DNA of 64,000 nucleotides from Botryllus schlosseri (Eukaryota). The position numbers and the translations under genes are program-made. Below the pieces are notes generated by a model. The model was not told where the DNA came from and did no database searches. It saw only the letters and a program-made list of their open reading frames with translations. Below are positions 38,001 to 61,879 of the stretch, piece after piece. The first letter of the stretch is position 1. Every line of letters starts with the position of its first letter. The stretch lies in the NCBI GenBank assembly GCA_051294905.1, contig CM119380.1, forward strand, positions 15,314,001 to 15,378,000, written 5' to 3'.

Positions 38001-41000
38001 GGAGTGGAATCAGATACTTAATTTCGGCCAGCCCTCATCATAATATTAGTAATAATAATAAATCCGAACCTGGTTGTTTTAAGTAAAAGCAGACTTCTAC
38101 TTTGTAAATAGTACACCTAGCGTGTCTTGCGTTCTAATCTACAACTACACTTTTAGATTACTTCCTACATCGACGCATCCAATGTCTACGGTAGCGGGAA
38201 AGAGGAAATCGACAATGTTCGCGATCTATCCTCTGATTTCGGACTACTCAAAGAAGGCCAGCCGTTGGAACCCGGGCAAAAAGCCATCCTGCCTTACAAT
38301 GTGTACTCCGATTTGGACTCAGGTAGCGAAACATATCCTTACTCAGCTCTGCATTTAAATCGGACGAATTGCACTGTGAATGCATGGGTGGAAAGTAGGT
38401 GTAATTACCAGATTTACATCCATTCTGAGGGGTGCTAACAGGCCGAATACACCAATACTTATGAGGCTATTTTCCAGAGGATATAGTGGATTCAATTCAC
38501 ACGTAGCTTACCACATGCGCCTTCTTGGTACGCGAAAGCAGAACCCACTCCACCCTTGGGATCTATTTATGTTGGAAGTAGGGGTATTTCACTCACCCTT
38601 TAGAATTGGTATGAACTGAAGGTCAATTTTTGTACCAGAAAGTGCATTTAACCCGGTCTGCATCCGACCCTACGGTGAGAATCGGTAAAATACACAATTT
38701 TCGTCTACAGCGTCCCTGGATATACTTATCGTTATTCATTCACCGTTGTGATCTATTTTCATCGGATGTAGGGGTATTTAACTCGCCCTTTAGAATTGAT
38801 GTGCATGTGCACTGAAGGCCAAATGTTGTACCAAAAAGTACATTTGACATGGTCTGCACCCTACCCTACCCTAAAAATCGGTGAAATGCACAATTCCCGT
38901 TTGTAGTGTCCCTGAATATGCAGATCATTCATTTTTGAAGAAACTCAGCTTTCCCAACGTCCACGATTTATTACAGATGTTTCGCTGTATTACGATTACC
39001 ATATCTATTTCAGAGGTGTCTGTGATCAGACCCGTGGCCCCGATCGAGTGCCGGCGCGGCGATTCTGAATCCCCACAAGAAAGAAGCGTGCCCTGTTTCT
39101 TGTGCGGAGATTTGAGATGCAACGAACAGGTATGTCGAACGCGGGGATATCTTGAAGCATGGTGAACTCTTGAGACTACCAGATTTCGGCGATGATATCA
39201 AATCAAACAGGCCTACTCGCTGGCTCGGCGGTATCTTAATATTTGCGTAACGTTACTGAATTATTTGGAATTCTCCTCATCTCGATATGCGTTTCGCAAT
39301 TTCCTACGTGGCCATCAAAATGTCGCACTAGTGTCATCAATCGGTAACCTATTCTTATCGCGCCAGATTAAGATCAATAAGATCGCAATTGATGGTGATA
39401 AAGGTCGCCTACAACGTAACGAGACAGGTGTAATCATGACTAAATGTGATACCAACTGTGGCAAATATCGCAAACCAAGCCGGAGCAAAAATTCCTGCGG
39501 TGTTTTACAATTGAAAAATTTGCATGTAAACAAATTCTGCAATGCGCCGATCGCAAGACGCGACCCTGTAGTTCTCAACGCGAAAAGGCTGTGTATAAGA
39601 GGGCGCGCTAAACGTTGAAGGCCCAAACTCACCGCTACGCGGATTTAATTAAACACTGTCAGTCCCTTGTTCATTCGTCGATGTTTCTTCAATTTCAGGT
39701 TCTACAGTTTTAATATATCGGCGGAAAATAGGATTATTTAGCAGATTTTCACCATAGCGTATGGTGATCATACTGCTGGCATTTTCTGGTACCACGGTTG
39801 GCTTTCAAACTCATTTCGAGGGGTGAAAACAGTCGAATACACCAATCCCTGAGGAGAAATATATCAGGGATGAATCTCCATACGATTTCGGTGCATTTCA
39901 CTCGTTTTCACTCACTGGAATGGATATGAAAGATACATTTTGTTCCAGGAAGTGCCGGTTACCCCATTTAAGGTATGGCGGAAATCGCCGCAGCGTTTAC
40001 AATTTAGGCCTAGACATCAACTCGAAATCCTTCTCTCGCATCCTGCAGTCCACAGCGTTCACGTAACTGCTCGGGTTAAAGTTCCTGTCATTTTCCAAAG
40101 GTAAGCCTGACCGCCATGCACACGATGTGGATGCGCGAGCATAACCGTATAGCCAGAAGACTGAAAGGACTCAACCCGAGCTGGAGCGGGGACACGATTT
40201 TCAACGAGGCGAGAAAGATTGTTGGTGCGGAAATGCAGCACATCACTCATTCGGTACGGGCTAACGCGCTTTGCTTGGCATGTGCAGAAAACCGAATTCC
40301 ATATTTGTTTTCTTCTCACAGCATTGGCTGCCGAAGATTTTGGGACCTTACTTCGAGAAAGTCGGGCCTTACAGGATGTACGATCCGAACTCGCCGGCGT
40401 CCATTGTAAATGTGTTTGCCACGGCGGCCTATCGGTTCGGACACACTATGATTAATCCGATTATGCACAGGTATATATTTTTGGTATGTTGAAGCTTTTG
40501 CATCTCTAAATATTTATTGAAAATTCACTATTTTCCACAGAGTTTGTAATGACTCAACTAATATGCGAGGCCGTAGGGGATGTAGCTCAGGTGGTAGAGC
40601 GCGCGCTTAGCATGTGCGACGTACCGGGATCGATGCCCGGCATCTCCATTGACTGTGTTTTTCCCTTCCGTTTTCACTAGAATCATCGTCTTTGCAACAT
40701 GATTGCATCATTACAGCTAAGAGTTGGGGATGTAGCTCAGATGACAGAGCGCGCGCTTAGCATGTGCGAGGTACCGGGATCGATGTCCGGCATCTCCAAT
40801 GTCTGCATTTTTCCCTTTCGTTTTCACTAGGATCATCATCTTTTCAACATGATTGCATCATTGCAGCTAACAACCGGGGATGTAGCTCAGATGGTCGAGC
40901 GCGCGCTTAGCATGTGCGAGGTACCGGGATCGATGCCCGGCATCTCCAATGAGTGCACTATCCCTTCCGTTTTCACTAGGATCATCATCTTTTGTACATG

Positions 41001-44000
41001 ATTGTATCATTACCGCTAACAGATGGGGATGTAGCTCAGATGGCAGAGCGCGCGCTTAGCATGTGCGAGGTACCGGGATCGATGCCCGGCATTTCCATTG
41101 ACTGTATTTTTCCCTTTCGTTTTCACTAGGATCATCATGTTTTCAACATGATTGCATCACTGCAGCTAACAACCGGGGATGTAGCTCAGATGGTCGAGCG
41201 CGCGCTTAACATGTCCGAGGTACCGGGATCGATGCCCGGCATCCCCAATGACTGTATTTTCCCTTCCGTTTTCACTAGGATCATCATGTTTTCAACATGA
41301 TTGCATCACTACAGCTAACAATTGGGGATGTAGCTCAGATGGTAGAGCGCGCGCTTAGCATGTGCGAGGTACCGGGATCGATGCCCGGCATCTCCAATGA
41401 CTGTATTTCTCCCTTCCGTTTTCACTAGGATCATCGTCTTTTGTACATGATTGTATCATTACCGCTAACAGATGGGGATGTAGCTCAGATGGCAGAGCGC
41501 GCGCTTAGCATGTGCGAGGTACCGGGATCGATGCCCGGCATTTCCAATGACTGTATTTTTCCCTTCCGTTTTCATTAGGATCATCATGTTTTCAACATGA
41601 TTGCATCACTGCAGCTAACAATCGGGGATGTAGCTCAGATGGTAGAGCGCGCGCTTAGCATGTGCGAGGTACCGGGATCGATGCCCGGCATCTCCAATGA
41701 CTGTATTTTTCCCTTCCGTTTTCACTAGGATCATCATGTTTTGAACATGATTGCATCAGTACAGCTAACAATTGGGGATGTAGCTCAGATGGTAGAGCGC
41801 GCGCTTAGCATGTGCGAGGTACCGGGATCAATGTGCGAGGTACCGGGATCAATGCCCGGCATCTCCAATGACTGGATTTTTCCCTTCCGTTTTCACTAGG
41901 ATCATCATGTTTTCAACATGATTGCATCAGTACAGCTAACAATTGGGGATGTAGCTCAGATGGTAGAGCGCGCGCTTAGCATGTGCGAGGTACCGGGATC
42001 AATGCCCGGCATCTCCAGTGACTGTATTTTTCCCTTCCGTTTTCACTAGGATCATCATGTTTTCAACATGATTGCATCAGTACAGCTAACAATTGGGGAT
42101 GTAGCTCAGATGGTAGAGCGCGCGCTTAGCATGTGCGAGGTACCGGGATCGATACCCGGCATCTCCAATGACTGTATTTTTCCCTTCCGTTTTCACTAGG
42201 ATCATCATGTTTTCAACATGATTGCATCAGTACAGCTAACATTTGGGGATGTAGCTCAGATGGTAGAGCGCGCGCTTAGCATGTGCGAGGTACCGGGATC
42301 GATACCCGGCATCTCCAATGACTGTATTTTTCCCTTCCGTTTTCACTAGGATCATCATGTTTTCAACATGATTGCATCAGTACAGCTAACAATTGGGGAT
42401 GTAGCTCAGATGGTAGAGCGCGCGCTTAGCATGTGCGAGGTACCGGGATCGATGCCCGGCATCTCCAATGACTGTATTTCTCCCTTCCGTTTTCACTAGG
42501 ATCATCGTCTTTTGTACATGATTGTATCATTACCGCTAACAGATGGGGATGTAGCTCAGATGGCAGAGCGCGCGCTTAGCATGTGCGAGGTACCGGGATC
42601 GATGCCCGGCATTTCCAATGACTGTATTTTTCCCTTCCGTTTTCATTAGGATCATCATGTTTTCAACATGATTGCATCACTGCAGCTAACAATCGGGGAT
42701 GTAGCTCAGATGGTAGAGCGCGCGCTTAGCATGTGCGAGGTACCGGGATCGATGCCCGGCATCTCCAATGACTGTATTTTTCCCTTCCGTTTTCACTAGG
42801 ATCATCATGTTTTGAACATGATTGCATCAGTACAGCTAACAATTGGGGATGTAGCTCAGATGGTAGAGCGCGCGCTTAGCATGTGCGAGGTACCGGGATC
42901 AATGTGCGAGGTACCGGGATCAATGCCCGGCATCTCCAATGACTGGATTTTCCCCTTCCGTTTTCACTAGGATCATCATGTTTTCAACATGATTGCATCA
43001 GTACAGCTAACAATTGGGGATGTAGCTCAGATGGTAGAGCGCGCGCTTAGCATGTGCGAGGTACCGGGATCAATGCCCGGCATCTCCAGTGACTGTATTT
43101 TTCCCTTCCGTTTTCACTAGGATCATCATGTTTTCAACATGATTGCATCAGTACAGCTAACAATTGGGGATGTAGCTCAGATGGTAGAGCGCGCGCTTAG
43201 CATGTGCGAGGTACCGGGATCGATACCCGGCATCTCCAATGACTGTATTTTTCCCTTCCGTTTTCACTAGGATCATCATGTTTTCAACATGATTGCATCA
43301 GTACAGCTAACATTTGGGGATGTAGCTCAGATGGTAGAGCGCGCGCTTAGCATGTGCGAGGTACCGGGATCGATACCCGGCATCTCCAATGACTGTATTT
43401 TTCCCTTCCGTTTTCACTAGGATCATCATGTTTTCAACATGATTGCATCAGTACAGCTAACAATTGGGGATGTAGCTCAGATGGTAGAGCGCGCGCTTAG
43501 CATGTGCGAGGTACCGGGATCAATGCCCGGCATCTCCAGTGACTGTATTTTTCCCTTCCGTTTTCACTAGGATCATCATGTTTTCAACATGATTGCATCA
43601 GTACAGCTAACAATTGGGGATGTAGCTCAGATGGTAGAGCGCGCGCTTAGCATGTGCGAGGTACCGGGATCAATGTGCGAGGTACCGGGATCAATGTGCG
43701 AGGTACCGGGATCAATGCCCGGCATCTCCAATGACTGTATTTTTCCCTTCCTTCTTCACTAGGATCATCATGTTTTCAACATGATTGCATCATTACAGTT
43801 AACAGTTGGGGATGTAGCGCAGATGGTAGAGCGCGCGCTTGGCATGTACGAGTTACCGGGATCGATGCCCGGCATCTCCAATGACTGTGTTTTTCCCTTC
43901 CGTTTGCACTAGAATCATCGTCTTTGCAACATGATTGTATCAATACAGCTAACAGATGGGGATGTAGATCAGATGGTAGAGCGCGCGCTTAGCATGTGCG

Positions 44001-47000
44001 AGGTACTGGAATCGATGCCCGGCTTCTCCAGAGGCGATTTTCCAATCCCTCGTACAATTTCCTTGGGCCCATTCTACTACTCTACCAATGACGAATCATA
44101 GGTTGTAATATCAACGTGATTTGCTATGCTTTGTGATGTAGTGAGACGCGATTTGGTGGGGACAAACGCGCTTTTCGTCGTTCCTCAATACGCCAGTGGT
44201 GATACAACGAGGCCAACACTGGCCGAGTGACCATACCCACATATCCACGAAAGTATCGCCCCATTGCTGATGCAAGAATCTCATTCGTTTGAAAGCCGCT
44301 TTGTATCGACACTTGTCGTCTAGATTGAATTCTTCGTGGGGAGTTACGGAGCACGGGAATCTCATGCTGCACCAAGCCTTTTTCGCGCCCTACCGAATCA
44401 TACACGAAGGCGGAATCGACCCTCTAATCCGCGGACTCATCTCAAAGCCGATGAAGGTATACGATCCTGCACTGCGAATAAATGTGTGGGCAATATGGTT
44501 TCGGTTGGTGAAATGAGAAAACTCCACGATTTCGTCCATTCCTTCATAGCGCCGTAAATATATACCGTATTAATTGTCGAAGCAGCAAATTCCAAGGAAT
44601 TTTTAACTACTTCTATAGTGGAATTAGAGAATGAAGAGTGCGAAAAGTGCTTAATTAGCTCGTTTCATCAAGTTGATTTGGTTGCTGGCTCGCATACTTT
44701 TAGAAGTTAGTCGGAGGCGGACACTTTCAAAATGAGACGATGTATCTTCGCAACGAAAGCATAATGACTAACGGCACTACAAATAGGTGCATTCAGTGTA
44801 TTCAGTTGCCGTGGTACCGGGGCTTTTTCACGCGGTTCTTATGGCAACTCCACCTGTAAATGAGATACAAACTTATGAGACATAACTATACGTTCTACTT
44901 TGCGAAATCCGAGCTATAAAAAGAGTAGTTTTGAGTAAGATAGTGTTTTGGTAGAAGTGGGAGCAGTCTTCAGTACAGATAAAAGGTGAAAGTACTTTGA
45001 TACTGACTATCTCTGTATATCTACATGTGGAATGGAGAATTCGACCCATTTACACCAACGTATTTGAATGTATCACTTACTGGAATGTGCGGATGACTTT
45101 ATTCACACTTTATTCAGGATGGCTATCGATAGATTTCACAATTTTCGTTTAAAGTGTATATTTTGAATGGGGGTTCAAATTCTGAAATTATCAATCGCGC
45201 TTTTCCATCCGCTAGGCTCGCGCCTCCGATTCCAACATGAACATCGAACTGGTCGAGCGACTGTTTGAACTCGCGGAGGACGTGGCGCTGGATCTCGGCG
45301 CGTTGAACATACAGCGCGGAAGGGACCACGCCCTGCCGTTTTACAACGACTGGCGGGAATACTGCAATCTTACGCGGGCGAGCACCTTCGATGACCTGGC
45401 GGAAGAAATTTCAAACGCAGAAGTGAGTCTGACACGCCCGCGCTGCCGGTTTAATTGAGAGTCCGCGTCTGTGCACGCGGGAGGATGGCGAAATTTAGAT
45501 TTAAACTTTACATTGGTAATACTCAAAATGTACGTAGAGACATTTCTAATCATCCGTTTTGTGCAAGTGCAACATGTAGGCCCACCCATAGAAGTAACAA
45601 GAAGTTGTCAATAACGAAGGACTAGCCTAATGCTTTTGCAGAATGCTTGAGTCGATGCTGCCTGCTTGTGCTACTTTTTGACTACTTCTACTTCACAGTA
45701 TTTTAGCCATAGATACTTATTTTTATGCTTTGGACTTTGTTAAGTAGTTTCTTTGATCTGTCCACATCGCTTCTAGAAGTGGAATTGCCGCAATGAGTGG
45801 GTTGGGTGAAATAGCTACTGGATTACGGGAACTGAATATATTTGTGGCCCCTCGACAAAATCTACGTTTTCAAAGCATTTACTTCAGAACCTTTCAGACC
45901 TTTTATTTTTATGCGTCTAGTTTAAGTGATTTTGGCATGTCTTGTAAATCACTAGTACTACTTGTAATTGAGTAGAAATCTACTTCTACTTGAGTACTTG
46001 ACTTGTGACTCGAAAGTAGTGACTTGATCCCAACACTGATATCGACCCATTTACTGTACGGAACGCATTGTACAGTTAGAGCCAAAGCCGATATTATTGT
46101 GTACTGGCAACCGCTTTTTTATTCGCTCGGATATCATGGACAACGACTCGAATGGGCATACCATTTTGCATTTCCGATGACAAAGGTTAATATGTCAACA
46201 TAGGGGCGGGGTTTGCGAATTATAAATTCCTCAACGTTCACGCGTTTATATCAATACTACAGGAACGCAAATGTCCCTTCATTCTGTTGGCTGCTTTCGC
46301 GATTCCATTCCATCTTCCCTTCCTGCAAAGACGCGACAATGAAATCTGAGAGCTATGAAAATTTAAGGATAATCGTAAATGTTTATGAATGAAACTGCAC
46401 AATAAGTTAACATTCACACTGTAAAGTAACATTTGAGCGGGGCTGGAGGCGTGTATAAGCCGAATATATATATGTAACTCTCGGTTGTGCTGCTGAAATT
46501 ACCAGAGACTGTCCAAGTAGTCAGCCTTGTTGCTCAAGTAGAATGATTGCAAAGAGTCGACATGCACAACTTTGCTTTAAGTGGAGGTACAGAACTACAA
46601 GAGATAAAAGTAATCAGGTAAAGGCTCAAAGCGTAGATTCGGTCGCGGGGTTGCTTACTTTTTAGCAGTTACTCGTAGGTGACTACAGCAGATTTAAGGG
46701 TGTATCTTCGCGACTAACGCACAATCACCAATGATACTGCAAATAGATGCAAACATGCAATATACGTAAATATAGTCAATTACCGTAATACAGGGGCTAT
46801 TTCGACCAGTTGTTATGACTATTTCACTTATGAGACAGATAAAAATTTAATTTCCACTTCTAATTTCAAAATTCAAGGTGCTGTAAAAAGTAAGTAGTTT
46901 TGCTGGAAAAGTGTGAAGCGGAATCCATGTAAAAATATAACCACTCTAGTAATTAGCGCAAGAAGGCCTCTTGACAGTTTAGCGCCGTACAAATCCGATC

Positions 47001-52215: not shown

Positions 52216-52288
52216 GGGGATGTAGCTCAAATGGTAGAGCGCGCGCTTAGCATGTGCGAGGTACCGGGATCGATGCCCGGCGTCTCCA
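52216..52288 (+). tRNA. Isolated tRNA-Ala(AGC)
   Basis: Same body as the array with G15A and A67G (U6:G67 wobble); G3:U70 kept. Confidence 0.8.
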
Positions 52289-52369
52289 TTGGTATAGTTT
52301 CGTTGTCTTGTACTCTTTCGTGGATCCAAGTATGATTCGATAATGATTTAAAGTAAGCCTCGAAAGGGT

Positions 52370-52421
52370 GGGGATGTAGCTCAAATGGTAGAGCGTTCGT
52401 CTAACGTGTCCGGCCTCTCCA
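52370..52421 (+). pseudogene. Internally deleted tRNA-Ala relic
   Basis: GGGGATGTAGCTCAAATGGTAGAGCG...CCGGCCTCTCCA followed by a T-run; variable loop and most of the T-arm missing. Confidence 0.75.
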
Positions 52422-52491
52422 GCGCCTTTTTGCTGTTCCAATGTGTGCTGCAGGGACCCACGTAGGGTTGTAATGACCGTAGTCGAAAGTC

Positions 52492-52535
52492 GGGGATGTA
52501 TCAGCTTAAACGACAGAGCGCACACTTGCTCTGTG
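52492..52535 (+). pseudogene. Highly degenerate 5' half tRNA-Ala relic
   Basis: GGGGATGTAtcAGCTtAAAcGacAGAGCGcaCaCTT aligns to the 5' half. Confidence 0.5.
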
Positions 52536-56083: not shown

Positions 56084-59000
56084 GTAGGCCTATATGAATG
56101 ATTGCTAGGGTTAAATAAAACAGCAGCGGAGATATGACAGACTTATAGCACTCTGTTGAAAATTACAAATGCGGTGAAGTGATGAAAAGAGTGAAGTTTG
56201 AGTGTTATTTTATTCCAACCTTTATCGCAGTGTTTTTGTCCGTTAGTATCGATAGTATGCTCTGAAATCTTATAAAATTTATTATCATCGCGTTGATTTT
56301 TTTCTGCAGGTGGAACGATCGCCGTAAAGCACAGCTGGCCTTGGCTGGCCCACATTTACAAAAAGGAGAGCGATGGTGTCTTGGCACCAGTAGTGAGAGA
56401 ATAACGATTGATGCTATTCTGTTCTATGCTGACCAGTGACCATTCGCAAGTTTTCAGAATTGCGGGGCTACAATCGTCTCGCCGAGACACGCAATTACGG
56501 CCAACCATTGTTTTATTATTGAAGCTGATGCGTATTACCTGACTGTAGGAAAGCATGATATCACCAATGATCCAGGAGTACATGAAGAGGTAGATATTGC
56601 ATTTTATTCCATGCCGTTTCGAAATCTATCGCCCTGGTAGTACCCGCAATTCTTACCTTTATCGCTGACGTATTGCCGGACCCATATTTGCTCATGACTA
56701 CTTTCAGACATTGCCTACCCGGAACAAAAATAGATGTTTCATAATCATTTAAAAGCTTGCGCTGCGGATGGTCATCCAACTAAAGTAAACAAATATATGA
56801 TTATGTCAGCTTGCACAAACGCTGCCTCTCTCAAGGCTTGATGAACCTAATCGGGATGTCTTTTTGTTTTCCTTAAGAAGACTATATAAGTTATATCGAT
56901 CATTCTGATCGGCCGTAATCCGTCATGTCTTTGGAGACTGTATGACACTGACGACGTGATAGAATGTTACTCAATGCCTTCTGTATCGCGACGCATAATT
57001 GCTCATATCATCTTCAGATCGTCCGAATACGACGGCATCCTTTCGCTATGCATGAAGCATTCTTGATTTATTACGACATGGCTTTACTGACTTTAAAGAA
57101 TGAACTTCGATTCGGAGGCAAAGTTCAACCGGCCTGTCTTCCGCCCAAGGACAAGATCGTCACGCCAGGTTTGATGAAGTCTAAGTCACTCTGTAGAGGT
57201 GGATGGGGGAAGTATGAAATCCTGTAGTCTACATTTGCCTGGGTTATAGTATGTGTTATAGTATTCGTTATGGTGCCGATTTGCATGAATATGGAGTTAC
57301 GGCATTTTTGTAACGACGAGTAAGTAGGTGTGTCCACAACTGGTCATTAACGAAGTACTTCTGTTTTCCGAGTACTCTAGTAGGTTTTGACCACTTTTTC
57401 TACTTACTGAACGTATTTAGAATACTTGAACTTCTACAGTTTTCATGCAATGCAACTTAATTTTAACACTTTAAATTTTGTAAAGTAGAAAGTACTTTTT
57501 GGATATGCACGTATCACTTTAATGAGAATAAAGGGCGAAAGAGCGCCTGCATCAAGGTAACTGAATATGTATCTTGAATTACACCTGTTTATTGTGTCAC
57601 TGATTGTTTTGCGTTAGTCGCGAAGATGCACACTGCAATTCGAAACTGGCTAACTCGGTTCTATTGCTAAAAGTATGTGATCTAGTGACAAAATATACTT
57701 TTCGAACGTAAGATGTACAATTGTACATACTTGAGAACTTTTCCGATCGGGATTTTTTTACTTCTTTACTTGAAATAGTGTTGACACGTCTTTTGAATTG
57801 CGTAAGAATTTCCTCTACTTCTACTTCAGCTGCAACGCTGACTACATTGATCATATCCGGCTGTATCGTACTTTTCCAGAGCCCATTCCACGTTATACAG
57901 TCGTTGTCACTGAGTGTGATGCACGTATCGATGTTGGTCGCCGATGTATCAATAACGTTGGAACGATTGACACGCAATGCGTGAATTTAGGGAGGCGGTG
58001 CTGGGCCGGCGGGTGGGGATCCACCCAGTACACCGGCGGGAAAAACATTCTGAAGCAAGTTGAACTTGAAATCGGCAGCTCCGAAGAATGCGTGAAGAAA
58101 TGGGGTGATAAAGCGGCCACCGAATACGCTGTTTGCGCTGGAAAAGAGAAAGGACAAGATACATGTTCAGGGGATAGGTATAATCCGTACCCATACTACT
58201 TTGCTAGAGATAATTGTCGCTCTACTCACACTAAAAGCGGATGTGGTCAAAGCATTCATTTACATTCCTAATTCAGCAGAAGAGAAGTAATTCCCGAATG
58301 TATATTCAGTTACAACAGGGCCGGCCAACCCATGGCCCGTGGCCCGCGAGAAGGTTTTGAGTGGCCCACGAGGTAATTTTTGAAATTAGTTACATTATCG
58401 AAAAATGATTACCCAGGTAATTTATTGTGAACTGGAAAGGCCAAGCAAAAATTTGATTAGCCCGACCGTGAAATTGGGGATATTGATGGCTAATATACCA
58501 GTTCCGACGAACGCATTGGCGTAGCCATGGGCCAGCCACATTTTCGTAGATTTTCGTTTATACGACCATACAGTAGAGTATTTCGCGGTAGAGTTATTTG
58601 TCTTGAAATTCTTCTTAGAATTTTGCGTGATTTATTGTCACCCGTTTTCTTGCTTCAAGTATTGGTAACCTCTCCAGAGTTGAGTCTAACTTTATTTGCA
58701 ATTATGAAAGAACGTGCCGCTCAACATGCGACTAATCGTGTGCACTCGTAAAAGGTCGTCGGCGATGAAACCTTATTGAAATAAAATGATAGACACAATG
58801 TTCGCCGAAACCTTCGATATTGACATGTTCAAGCCGCTATTAATCCTATCCTTGCCAAATCAGCCCAACCGCATACAGAGGAAACCGTAATAGATTCAAG
58901 CAACAATATTATTCAGCAGAATTCATTTATTTCTGCGAAATTTTCGCGCTACGCGCGCTTAGGATATTGATGCACGCTGGATTTTCATGACATAATTGTT

Positions 59001-61879
59001 ATCGATTTTGATGCGTAGTAAGATAAATTCTTGTTTTCACCGTTACCTAATCCGGTTCGCTCCAAATTGGCGACTAATAAAATGTCATCAATATTCAAGT
59101 GGCCCGCGCAATAGGGATGGTGTGAACGTGAGGTTCACGTTCGCGTTCTGTGTGTGAACCTCGGAAATTTGGAGGTTCGCGTTCACAACAGAACCTTGGT
59201 AGGTTCTGCACTGTGAACCTTTTTCATATATTACAATTTTCACTTCATTATGACATCTTTGGTTCGAATTTATTGCATTTTAAATGCGGGTCACTCTATG
59301 TTTATAAAAATCAACACAAGACGAGCATGCACCTTGACAATCCTAAAAATATTACTTGCTTCGTTACAAAAGTTTGCTCGAAATATCCAGCTTTCCGTTT
59401 GTGAATATTTAGTGACTCTCTGCTGTGAACTTGACCCGCAATCACACAACATCACGAGCAAAATACACTACATGTAGTCAGCGAATGATGCTTATTCAAC
59501 CAATCAATGAGATTGATAACGTTTTTTGATGTAACAAACCTAGCAGGCGTACGGGGTCAATCTTGACTTCATATGCTAACTGTATCATTAAAACCAAATC
59601 CGTGCGATTGAGGTATTGGCTACAGCTGTATAACTTGTGGGGTAGCCTAATATCGGTAGCAAGGATAGAAACCTGTTTCACACTCTGCTCAATATCAATG
59701 CAGCAACACTCAGACGCCGAACACATTGTCCGGTATGGCCAAGACCGTTAAGGCTTAAGCTTATATTCCCTGGATAAGTCCTCGTCGAAATTGTTGGCAA
59801 AGCGACGGATGATATTGATTTTATGGGAGTATTGTATCATCTGATTGCCTATAGGTTGATACATTTAGCGACCTAAAACGCCAATATGTACCTCAGCATT
59901 GTGGCATTATGTGGCCCGAGTCGTCGTTGGGTATCGTGCACATTAATATAGGCTATCACTTCATTGAAAGATAGGGTTGTAATTAGCAATATGACGTCAC
60001 GTGCCGTCATGAGGTTCACGTTCGCGTTCACGCAGAACCTTTCAAAAAGGTTCGCGTTCACACGAACCTGAACCTTTCAGAGGTTCACACCATCCCTACG
60101 GCGCGCAATGGTTCGTAACTCTGATGCGGCCCTTTGGCCGAAAAGGTTGGCCACCCTTAAGTTATACAAGAAGACGTAGTAACTTTGTGTTAGGAGGGAT
60201 GGTATGAACATGACGTTCACGTTCGGTCGTTCGCCTTCTGTCCGTGAACCTCAGAAATTTAGAGGTTCCCGTTCACAAACGAACTTTGGTAAGTTTTGCA
60301 CTGTGAACCTTTTTTATATGTTATAATTTTTCACGTCGTTATAACATCTTTGGCTCAAATTATTTGCATTTCAAACTATAGGACCACTCTGTGCATTGCG
60401 CTGACAACATAAAAAAAATCAACACTAACAAGGATGAACCTTGTCAATCCTGAAAAATTTACTTGCCTTGTTTCAAAAGTTTGCTCGAAATATTCAACTT
60501 TCTGTTCATGAATATTCAGTAACTCTCTGCTGTGAGCTTGACCCGCAATCACACATAAAGAATGAAATACACTACATATAGGTAGTCAGCATATGATGCT
60601 TATTCAACTAATCAATGCAATTTATATAAAGAGTACATCACTGGCCAATGTAAAAAATCTAGCAGGGGTGCGGAATCCGTCTTGCTTTGATATGTTTATT
60701 GTATCATAAAACCTAAATCCGTGTGGTTTGGGTGTTGGCTACTGTATGACATGTTTAAGGGGTAATATCGGTAGCAAGTAGGGATGGTGTGGAACGTGAG
60801 GCTGACGTTCGCGTTCTGTGTGCGAACCCAGGGATCGCTGGTGCGAACCTCACAAATTTAGAGAATCACGTTCACAAACGAACCTTGGTAGGTTCTGCAC
60901 TGTGAACCTTCTTCATATAGTGCCTTTTTTCACGTCATTATAACATCTCTGGCTGAAATTCTTTGCATTTCACCTCCCGACCACTCTACACATGGCGCTG
61001 GCAGCATAAAAAATCACAAATAAACGAGCATGCACCTTGCCAATCTCAAAAAACTGTACTTGCTTTGTTACAAAAGTTTGCTCCAAATAATCCGCTTTCC
61101 GTTTATGAATATTTGGTGACTCTCTACTGTGAGCTTGACCCGCAATCACACAACATCAAGAACGAAATACACTACATGTAGGTAGTCAGCGAATGATGCT
61201 ATGAAAAGTACCCAAGTAGTAGGTTTCAAAAGGTAGGCTTTGTCGAGCGGTCGCATACTATTTGCAGTGATCCGGAGATGGCCACTATCGGAATTGCAGG
61301 GTTCGTCTTCAAGACTAACCAATGACACTACTAATAAGTGCAATCTTCGAAAATATATTCAGTTACTGTGATACGCGGCCCTTACGCCCACTTTTCATGA
61401 CAATTTCACTCGCCAAAGTGTGGAAACTAAGTGGTTTCGCCTCTAAACTGTACAGAAGTGTATAGTCGAAGAACATAACCACTTTAATAATTGGTGCAAG
61501 TATAGGCCAACTTGAGTACTCTGAAAATGTAGAATTACTTCCTTACAGACCACTTATAAAAAGTACAATATAAAACGACTTCGTGATTTTTCCGTGGGGT
61601 CATCATGTCGTCTTGGCGCGATTCAAAGGCATCCCAATTAAGAAGTGGTACTGTAAAGATGCATTTTTAAATTTCAGCGGAGGGCCGCTATTGTGCGAAG
61701 AAAATGGAAAATGGATTGTATACGGAGCCACAAGCTACGGCGATTTCCCTTGCGCGACCGGGGAGTTAGCTGTATACGCGGCAATATCATTTTCATTGAA
61801 TTGGATCTGCTGTTTCTTGGATGTACTGCCGCAATGCCGAGACATACCGTGCACGCCTTTGGAATTTCGACATCCTTAA
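55994..61879 (+). CDS. S1A trypsin-like serine protease (activation peptide and catalytic domain, 6 exons)
   Basis: RCG...KPR/IVGG activation site, SWPW, TANHC (His57), YYDMALL (Asp102), QPACLP, GWG, GDSGGP (Ser195); D189 suggests trypsin-like specificity. Confidence 0.92.
56310..56392 (+). CDS. Protease exon: GGTIAVKHSWPWLAHI
   Basis: tttttctgcag/gtgaga; 65-nt downstream intron. Confidence 0.9.
56458..56589 (+). CDS. Protease exon with catalytic His
   Basis: NCGATIVSPRHAITANHCF...VGKHD. Confidence 0.92.
57018..57168 (+). CDS. Protease exon with catalytic Asp
   Basis: RRHP...YYDMALLTLKNELRFGGKVQPACLP. Confidence 0.92.
57991..58177 (+). CDS. Protease exon CWAGGWG...QDTCSGD plus first 2 nt of the Ser195 codon
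   Basis: Ends GGG GAT AG|gtataa. Confidence 0.93.
58316..60158. mobile_element. hAT-type element (CAGGGCCGGCCAACC...GGTTGGCCACCCT) hosting a family A copy
   Basis: Imperfect TIR; GGCCC subterminal motifs; flanks AGTTACAA/AGTTATAC. Confidence 0.65.
59112..60098. mobile_element. Uninterrupted 987-bp family A copy
   Basis: Both TIRs present; collinear with 4900..5210 plus 8320..9202. Flanks share CGCGCAA but no exact 8-bp TSD. Confidence 0.88.
60195..60778. mobile_element. Left-end partial family A copy
   Basis: AGGGATGGTATGAAC start; aligns to 59112..59660. Confidence 0.8.
60779..61200. mobile_element. Left-end partial family A copy abutting the previous one
   Basis: TAGGGATGGTGTGGAAC start; aligns to 59112..59490. 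Confidence 0.8.
61678..61879 (+). CDS. Protease terminal exon
   Basis: atttcag|C GGA GGG CCG: (S)GGPLLCEENGKWIVYGATSYG...VY...WI, Cys-rich tail, TAA. Confidence 0.93.

What the first reader, a model, noticed from the sequence alone, without database searches (positions are those of the whole stretch)
40576..44030. 23-copy tRNA-Ala(AGC) tandem array nested, sense-strand, in a peroxidasin intron
Seen: a 3.5-kb array of ~150-bp units fills most of the intron directly after the exon carrying the proximal heme His (RFGHT). About 16 copies look foldable with A/B boxes, G3:U70 and a downstream T-run. Established: tRNA genes carry internal Pol III promoters, and cloverleaf precursors are cut by RNase P and RNase Z. 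Inference: the array is either a large alanine-tRNA source hosted by a Pol II gene, or a regulator of the host. It could act through Pol III/TFIIIC occupancy, or because 23 cloverleaves in the nascent pre-mRNA could be cleaved before splicing and truncate peroxidasin mid-catalytic domain.
Basis: partly seen in the sequence, partly recalled or inferred. Interest (0 to 1): 0.72.

Follow-up and report, generated by a model that had tools for sequence, protein, structure and literature searches.

The report
Alanine tRNA gene array in intron
Twenty-three head-to-tail copies of an ordinary alanine tRNA gene fill one intron of an expressed peroxidasin-like gene in what earlier scan notes call a sea squirt; the intron is still spliced out precisely and relatives lack the array, so it looks like a young tRNA gene cluster of a known kind, not a switch for its host.

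Summary
There are 23 units of about 150 bp at 40576-44030, each a 73-nt tRNA-Ala plus a 77-nt spacer with T-runs. They lie sense in the 3,853-bp intron 40471-44323 of a + strand LRR/Ig/haem-peroxidase gene, directly after the RFGHT exon.

Twelve copies are fully canonical. Five fold but are changed at conserved positions. Six are defective: three carry 21/42-bp internal duplications, one has anticodon AAC plus C70, and two have stem mispairs.

A 7-unit block is duplicated with 1 mismatch in 1,071 bp, and the edge units are the most decayed. That is the signature of unequal crossing-over. tRNA bodies vary about 2.5 times less than spacers.

RNA contigs from two studies join the flanking exons exactly. 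No poly(A) signal lies in the intron.

In marine-metagenome relatives the same intron is about 194 bp and tRNA-free. In another relative it is tRNA-free for at least 1.5 kb.

Best reading: a lineage-specific cluster of RNA polymerase III tRNA-Ala(AGC) genes of a known kind. Earlier notes of this scan list other tRNA arrays elsewhere in this genome.

Pol III activity and true copy number remain untested. Regulation of the host by cleavage or roadblock has no support.

The parts
40576..44030 (+). Tandem array of 23 tRNA-Ala units (73-nt gene plus 77-nt spacer). It begins at the first base of a tRNA and ends at the last base of a tRNA.
41324..42394 (+). Seven-unit higher-order block, first copy (units 6-12)
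   Evidence: 1 mismatch in 1,071 bp against 42395-43465
42395..43465 (+). Seven-unit higher-order block, second copy (units 13-19)
41624..41696 (+). Example of the consensus tRNA-Ala(AGC) gene. Identical copies start at 41324, 42395 and 42695.
   Evidence: Rfam 54 bits
42095..42167 (+). Example of the G60A variant (T-loop ATCGATA). Identical copies start at 42245, 43166 and 43316. This is the best Rfam score.
   Evidence: the same T-loop is the commonest in other eukaryotic loci
41774..41867 (+). Defective copy with a 21-bp internal duplication. The same defect is at 42845-42938, and a 42-bp version is at 43616-43730.
41175..41247 (+). Copy 5: anticodon AAC, C70 instead of U70, and a C:C mispair in the anticodon stem
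43808..44030 (+). Decayed 3' edge units 22 (anticodon GGC, 2 mispairs) and 23 (3 mispairs)
40471..44323 (+). Host intron (GT..AG), removed precisely in RNA contigs
   Evidence: joint 40468->44322 with cut +2, in X7 and X8
40321..40470 (+). Host exon encoding ...[16 protein letters not shown] (haem peroxidase domain)
44324..44458 (+). Next host exon ([25 protein letters not shown]...)
52216..52288 (+). Separate single tRNA-Ala(AGC) gene outside the array, 2 differences from the array consensus

Best explanation
This is a young, lineage-specific tandem cluster of nuclear tRNA-Ala(AGC) genes that arose inside an intron and grew by unequal crossing-over between units. Inferred mechanism: each unit is its own RNA polymerase III transcription unit. 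TFIIIC would bind the internal A box (TAGCTCAGATGG) and B box (GGATCGATGCC). Pol III would stop at the T-run 10-11 nt or, failing that, about 23 nt past the gene. RNase P and RNase Z would trim the ends, CCA would be added, and alanyl-tRNA synthetase would recognise G3:U70. About half of the copies look fully fit, so the cluster probably adds to the alanine tRNA supply, while the edge and insertion copies are dying. Its place in the peroxidasin-like gene is incidental: the host is transcribed in the same direction and the intron is spliced out normally. Shown: anatomy, conservation pattern, splicing, absence in relatives. Inferred: Pol III transcription and use of the tRNAs.
For: Cloverleaf, anticodon and identity elements are present. 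T-run terminators are present. The tRNA body is less variable than the spacer: mean pairwise difference 4.1% against 10.3%, and variable sites 9/73 against 23/77, p=0.01. The 7-unit block is 99.9% identical to its twin and the edges are decayed. The unusual A54 T-loop is normal for this tRNA: it occurs in human tRNA-Ala-AGC-10-1 (PMC10620816) and in 112 of the 125 full-length matches in 120 metagenome loci that share the 5' 39 nt. The exon-exon joint across the intron appears in contigs of two studies. The orthologous intron is about 194 bp without a tRNA in L003/L004, and has no tRNA in 1.5 kb of L001. No inverted terminal repeats flank the array. tDNA clusters and intronic tRNA genes are common in eukaryotes (PMC2888827, PMC4999229).
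Against: No direct evidence of Pol III transcription was obtained. The poly(A)-type raw RNA run gave only 2 reads, both exonic. The small array-matching contigs in run X8 could come from pre-mRNA, from DNA carry-over multiplied by copy number, or from other loci. Clustered tRNA genes are epigenetically silenced in Arabidopsis (PMC7544208). Six of 23 copies are defective. The lower variation of tRNA bodies could also come from gene conversion with dispersed tRNA-Ala genes.
Confidence: 0.68

Rival explanations
1. The array is a silent, decaying tDNA satellite. It keeps tRNA shape only because it is young or because gene conversion refreshes it. It is not transcribed, or is epigenetically silenced, and adds nothing to the tRNA pool.
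For: Six of 23 copies are broken and five more are changed at conserved positions. The near-identical 7-unit duplication shows recent neutral-looking expansion. The array is absent from relatives. Arabidopsis tandem tDNA clusters are silenced (PMC7544208). The raw RNA run gave no reads on the array.
Against: tRNA bodies vary 2.5 times less than spacers. Terminators are kept in nearly all units. Twelve copies are flawless. The raw RNA library is not of a kind that captures tRNAs, so its silence says nothing.
Confidence: 0.2
2. The array regulates its host. Pol III/TFIIIC complexes would block or slow Pol II, or RNase P/Z would cut the 23 cloverleaves in the nascent pre-mRNA and truncate peroxidasin transcripts. 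A variant of this reading has the tRNAs produced from the host's Pol II transcript.
For: The array is in sense orientation and fills 90% of an intron inside the catalytic domain. Pol III interference with a host gene is documented for an antisense MIR in Polr3e (PMC5358760). A host promoter influences intronic tRNAs in C. elegans (PMC4999229). tRNA-like structures in Pol II transcripts are cut by RNase P in MALAT1 and GUT15 (PMC6152437).
Against: Correctly spliced host RNA appears in contigs of two studies, with depth after the intron not lower than before it (X8 46.5 against 16.7-21.6; X7 6.7 against 5.9-8.2). The array is not conserved in the orthologous intron of relatives. Sense intronic tRNAs are spliced efficiently in Arabidopsis, and intronic cloverleaves enhanced splicing and were not processed in human cells (PMC6152437, PMC7722341). 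Earlier scan notes list other intronic or tandem tRNA arrays in this genome, which argues against a host-specific design.
Confidence: 0.07
3. The copy number is partly an assembly product: the true array is notably shorter or longer than 23 units.
For: Two 1,071-bp blocks differ by a single base, which is hard to assemble. No contig in the laid runs spans the array. Summed DNA contig depth over the array averages about 63 against about 7-10 on unique flanks, and variants of edge-type units (40657 G>A, 40721 G>C) stand at depth 59-160.
Against: The tool warns that summed contig depth is not a copy number, and tRNA-body words are shared with other tRNA-Ala loci. The excess depth points to more units rather than fewer. 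Fifteen distinct unit haplotypes cannot arise from collapse or artificial expansion alone.
Confidence: 0.3

Closest known systems
Homogeneous tandem tRNA gene clusters of eukaryotes (Arabidopsis tRNA-Pro, tRNA-Cys and Ser-Tyr-Tyr clusters; Entamoeba tRNA arrays; zebrafish and stickleback tDNA clusters)
   Same: Head-to-tail, same-orientation copies of complete tRNA genes with short spacers. Lineage-specific, fast turnover, higher-order repeat structure, a mix of intact and decayed copies (PMC2888827, PMC10701932, PMC7544208).
   Different: Here the unit is very short (150 bp, one gene) and the whole cluster sits in a single intron of a conserved extracellular-matrix enzyme gene. Expression state is unknown.
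tRNA genes nested in introns of protein-coding genes (C. elegans, Arabidopsis)
   Same: Sense or antisense tRNA genes inside introns are common: 44% of C. elegans tRNA genes, no more than chance (PMC4999229). Host introns are spliced efficiently (PMC6152437).
   Different: Those cases are single genes. Here 23 copies make up 90% of the intron. In C. elegans some host-tRNA pairs are conserved across species, whereas here the relatives examined lack the array.
tRNA-like elements processed from, or acting on, Pol II transcripts (MALAT1 mascRNA, Arabidopsis GUT15 tRNA-like, human nimtRNAs)
   Different: Those elements lack autonomous Pol III expression or true tRNA function. The units here have full A and B boxes, terminators and alanine identity elements, and the host mRNA is joined correctly across them.
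Pol III roadblock in Polr3e (antisense MIR; PMC5358760)
   Same: A Pol III unit inside an intron of a Pol II gene.
   Different: That element is antisense, conserved across mammals and shown to be occupied by Pol III. This array is sense, not conserved, and its occupancy is unknown.

Membership tests
Nuclear tRNA-Ala(AGC) gene (Pol III type 2 promoter) | Cloverleaf with 7/4/5/5-bp stems and 73 nt without encoded CCA | tested here: met
   17 of 23 copies have no stem mispair. ARAGORN and Rfam 17 copies at 33-56 bits against a gathering score of 29.
Nuclear tRNA-Ala(AGC) gene (Pol III type 2 promoter) | Anticodon AGC, G3:U70 and discriminator A73 (alanine identity) | tested here: met
   AGC in 21 of 23 copies (copy 5 AAC, copy 22 GGC). 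G3:U70 in 22 of 23 copies. A73 in all.
Nuclear tRNA-Ala(AGC) gene (Pol III type 2 promoter) | Internal A box and B box | tested here: met
   TAGCTCAGATGG and GGATCGATGCC were read in the sequence. The A54 form of the B box is shared with human tRNA-Ala-AGC-10-1 and with most metagenome loci of this tRNA.
Nuclear tRNA-Ala(AGC) gene (Pol III type 2 promoter) | Run of four or more T shortly downstream (Pol III terminator) | tested here: met
   T5 or T4 starts 10-11 nt downstream in 19 of 22 spacers; spacers 3, 6 and 13 lack it. TTTT at about +23 in every spacer except 21.
Nuclear tRNA-Ala(AGC) gene (Pol III type 2 promoter) | Transcribed by Pol III and matured to a charged tRNA | tested here: inconclusive
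   Run X8 holds a 56-nt contig of the tRNA body at depth 118 and a spacer-spanning contig at depth 40.6, but their origin is ambiguous. The raw RNA run had no reads on the array.
Homogeneous tandem tDNA cluster | Adjacent same-isoacceptor tRNA genes less than 1,000 nt apart in parallel orientation | tested here: met
   23 units at 149-192 bp spacing, all on the + strand. The definition is from PMC2888827.
tRNA-derived SINE or SINE-derived satellite | tRNA-related head joined to an unrelated body and tail; dispersed copies with target-site duplications | tested here: not met
   Units hold a complete tRNA including the 3' acceptor strand. Other motif hits in the window (33607, 25874, 13422) are chance matches. 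The spacer pattern has 0 hits in metagenome contigs.
Transposon-borne tRNA cluster | Terminal inverted repeats and a target-site duplication around the cluster | tested here: not met
   No inverted repeat brackets the array.
RNase P/Z-processed tRNA-like module of a Pol II transcript (mascRNA/GUT15 type) | Host RNA ends or is cut at the tRNA-like element, and the element is not autonomously transcribed | tested here: inconclusive
   Host exons are joined across the intron in two studies and the units carry their own promoter and terminator. Ends of nascent RNA cannot be seen in contigs.
Peroxidasin (host gene) | LRR, Ig and animal haem peroxidase domains, with a C-terminal VWC domain | tested here: inconclusive
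   LRRCT, I-set Ig and An_peroxidase exons were found in order on the + strand. No VWC domain was found in ORFs from 47.7 to 56 kb. The joined model was not searched.

The most novel reading that the evidence does not exclude
The array could be the main alanine-tRNA(AGC) locus of this genome. Its output could be tied to the host: the host promoter might open the intron for Pol III, as in C. elegans, or RNase P/Z might release up to 23 tRNAs from each excised intron. Either would couple alanine decoding capacity to peroxidasin-expressing, matrix-secreting cells.
Probability: 0.07. Interest if true: 0.6.

Novelty: new member of a known kind. Interest (0 to 1): 0.25.

Why it matters
It is a clean, datable example of how a tRNA gene cluster is born and grows by unequal crossing-over inside an ancestrally short intron without breaking the host gene. 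If active, it could hold a large share of one animal's alanine tRNA genes. Its many copy-specific variants would allow copy-resolved tests of Pol III activity in tandem arrays and of Pol II/Pol III coexistence. As it stands it does not change what is known about tRNA gene organisation.

Tried and rejected
1. SINE or dispersed-repeat origin: other motif hits in the window are chance matches.
2. Transposon carriage: no terminal inverted repeats.
3. The same unit elsewhere: the spacer pattern gave 0 hits in metagenome contigs.
4. Premature polyadenylation in the array: no AATAAA or ATTAAA in the intron.
5. A54 in the T-loop as a defect: rejected, because it is the normal form of this tRNA.
6. Raw RNA reads (X23): only 2 reads, both exonic, so they say nothing about the array.
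7. VWC domain or further host exons between 47.7 and 56 kb: none found.
8. Earlier-findings look-up for 'peroxidasin': no finding holds that word.
9. One paper search failed on term length.
Full report
**Observation.** ARAGORN finds 21 tRNA genes on the + strand between 40576 and 43881, plus one at 52216. Rfam's tRNA model scores 17 array copies above its gathering score, the best at 54-56 bits. Tandem Repeats Finder reports a 150-bp period with better-matching 300- and 450-bp periods. A motif scan places 23 unit starts from 40576 to 43958. Each unit is a 73-nt tRNA followed by a 76-77-nt spacer. Three units are longer because 21 bp (twice) or 42 bp (once) of the tRNA body are duplicated internally. 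The array begins at base 1 of a tRNA and ends at base 73 of a tRNA, giving 23 genes and 22 spacers.

**Host gene.** Stop-to-stop frames on the + strand give exons that match LRRCT, I-set Ig domains and consecutive parts of the animal haem peroxidase profile.
- The exon ending at 40470 encodes ...[16 protein letters not shown].
- The next exon starts at 44324.
- The intron 40471-44323 (3,853 bp, GT..AG) is 89.7% array.
- No VWC domain was found downstream, so I call the host 'peroxidasin-like'.

**Quality of the copies.**
- Four copies are identical to the consensus, four carry G60A, three carry G57A, and copy 1 has two changes at variable positions. That makes 12 fully canonical genes.
- Five more fold without mispairs but are changed at conserved positions. 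Three have C20 plus a G4:U69 wobble, copy 3 has A21C, and copy 2 has G19A and a G53:U61 pair.
- Six are defective. Three carry the internal duplications. Copy 5 has anticodon AAC, C70 and a C:C mispair. Copy 22 has anticodon GGC and two mispairs. Copy 23 has three mispairs.
- G3:U70 is present in 22 of 23 copies, and A73 in all.
- A T5 run (T4 in units 5 and 16) starts 10-11 nt after the gene in 19 of 22 spacers. TTTT follows at about +23 in every spacer except that of unit 21.
- The T-loop has A at position 54, which departs from the textbook B box. The same GGGATCGATGCCC arm is printed for human tRNA-Ala-AGC-10-1 (PMC10620816).
- ATCGATA or ATCGATG is the T-loop in 112 of the 125 full-length matches in 120 eukaryote-derived metagenome loci that share the first 39 nt of this tRNA. 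It is therefore the normal form.

**How the array evolves.**
- Units 6-12 (41324-42394) and units 13-19 (42395-43465) differ by one base in 1,071.
- Units at both edges are the most diverged.
- Over 15 distinct unit haplotypes, mean pairwise difference is 4.1% in the tRNA and 10.3% in the spacer.
- Among the 17 non-degenerate units, 9 of 73 tRNA sites vary against 23 of 77 spacer sites (Fisher p=0.01).
- This is the pattern expected of a tandem gene family homogenised by unequal crossing-over, with some constraint on the gene body or conversion of it.
- No inverted repeats bracket the array.
- The other motif hits in the window are chance matches.

**Relatives.**
- The exon before the intron found an unnamed 82-aa product in a JGI metagenome. 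Its 17-kb contig (L001) carries four exons colinear with the window at 68-82% identity and the same intron position. The 1,505 bp of intron up to the contig end hold no tRNA.
- The exon after the intron led to marine-metagenome contigs.
- L003 and L004 carry both flanking exons. There the intron is only about 194 bp, with no tRNA.
- L002 has 380 tRNA-free bases before the downstream exon.
- The array is therefore a lineage-specific gain in an intron that is short or tRNA-free in the relatives examined. I do not know how close these relatives are.
- The metagenome loci of this tRNA hold one copy each. Five of them hold two copies, 380-1,240 bp apart, and none has 150-bp arrays. Short-read assemblies would tend to collapse such arrays, however.

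**RNA and DNA runs.** All 24 runs listed carry one (coded) species label; 20 hold at least part of the stretch, at most half of its sampled words. I laid one raw RNA run, two probable RNA contig sets from different studies and one DNA contig set on 39900-44600.
- Both RNA contig sets contain the joint that removes exactly 3,853 bases with GT..AG ends, and also the 68-nt intron before it.
- Depth on the exon after the array is not lower than on the exons before it.
- The host is therefore expressed and the array-bearing intron is spliced correctly. That argues against wholesale truncation.
- The raw run gave two exonic reads only.
- Run X8 also has a 56-nt contig of the tRNA body (depth 118) and a 154-nt contig spanning spacer 1 (depth 40.6).
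- Those two contigs could come from tRNA precursors. They could also come from intronic pre-mRNA or trace DNA multiplied by copy number, or from other loci. I do not count them as evidence of Pol III activity.
- In the DNA set, summed depth over the array is several times that of the unique flanks, and loose ends show further tRNA-Ala loci elsewhere.
- The tool warns that this depth is not a copy number. It does not suggest that the assembly overstates the array.

**Interpretation.** The most likely reading (about 0.68) is an ordinary, young tandem cluster of Pol III tRNA-Ala(AGC) genes whose intronic position is incidental.
- tDNA clusters with parallel orientation and rapid turnover are widespread (PMC2888827).
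- 44% of C. elegans tRNA genes are intronic, no more than chance (PMC4999229).
- Earlier notes of this scan, which I did not check, list other tRNA arrays on other pieces of this genome, described there as a sea squirt. One of them lies antisense in an intron.
- A silent satellite state (about 0.2) cannot be excluded, because Arabidopsis tandem tDNAs are silenced (PMC7544208).
- Host regulation by roadblock or RNase P/Z cleavage (about 0.07) has no support from the splicing data or from conservation.
- Published tests of sense intronic tRNAs found efficient or enhanced splicing (PMC6152437, PMC7722341). The documented roadblock case is antisense and conserved (PMC5358760).

**Verdict.** This is a new member of a known kind, of modest interest.

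Noticed in passing
window 52216-52520: A separate tRNA-Ala(AGC) gene lies at 52216-52288. It has 2 differences from the array consensus and no run of four T in the next 30 nt. A 52-nt internally deleted copy follows at 52370-52421, and a further GGGGATGTA start lies near 52492. This may be the remnant of a second small array, between the peroxidase exons and the next gene.
   Followed up: partly
window 41175-41247: Array copy 5 reads anticodon AAC (valine), has C70 instead of U70 and has a C:C mispair in the anticodon stem. This agrees with a separate note on this window. It looks like a decaying copy rather than a working recoded tRNA.
   Followed up: partly
window 41810-41854, 42881-42925, 43652-43717: A 21-bp piece of the tRNA body (ATGTGCGAGGTACCGGGATCA) is duplicated once or twice inside three copies. 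All three also carry G57A, which creates the ATG microhomology that could drive slippage.
   Followed up: partly
window 40657 and 40721 (run X1): DNA contigs carry G>A and G>C variants of the edge-type units at depth 59-160, against 7-10 on unique flanks. This hints at many more units of this type than are assembled here, either in this array or in another one elsewhere.
   Followed up: no
window 42738-42767 (run X8 record 15): A 341-nt contig of a probable RNA run joins a tRNA-Ala 3' end to a different flank (GTTTTCCTTAAATC...). The same flank appears in DNA contigs. This is another tRNA-Ala locus whose downstream flank appears in RNA data.
   Followed up: no
window 40684-40712 and the same place in each spacer: Each spacer holds a short hairpin (ATCATG, a 7-nt loop, CATGAT) between the second and third T-runs. 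Its meaning is unknown.
   Followed up: no
window 38551-38919: A 196-bp unit is repeated 1.9 times (78% match) in an upstream intron of the host gene.
   Followed up: no
window 56440-61876 (+): A trypsin-like serine protease gene lies downstream on the same strand. It gives a Pfam Trypsin hit on the exon at 56440-56637, and further protease-like frames lie at 57774-58268 and 61574-61876.
   Followed up: partly
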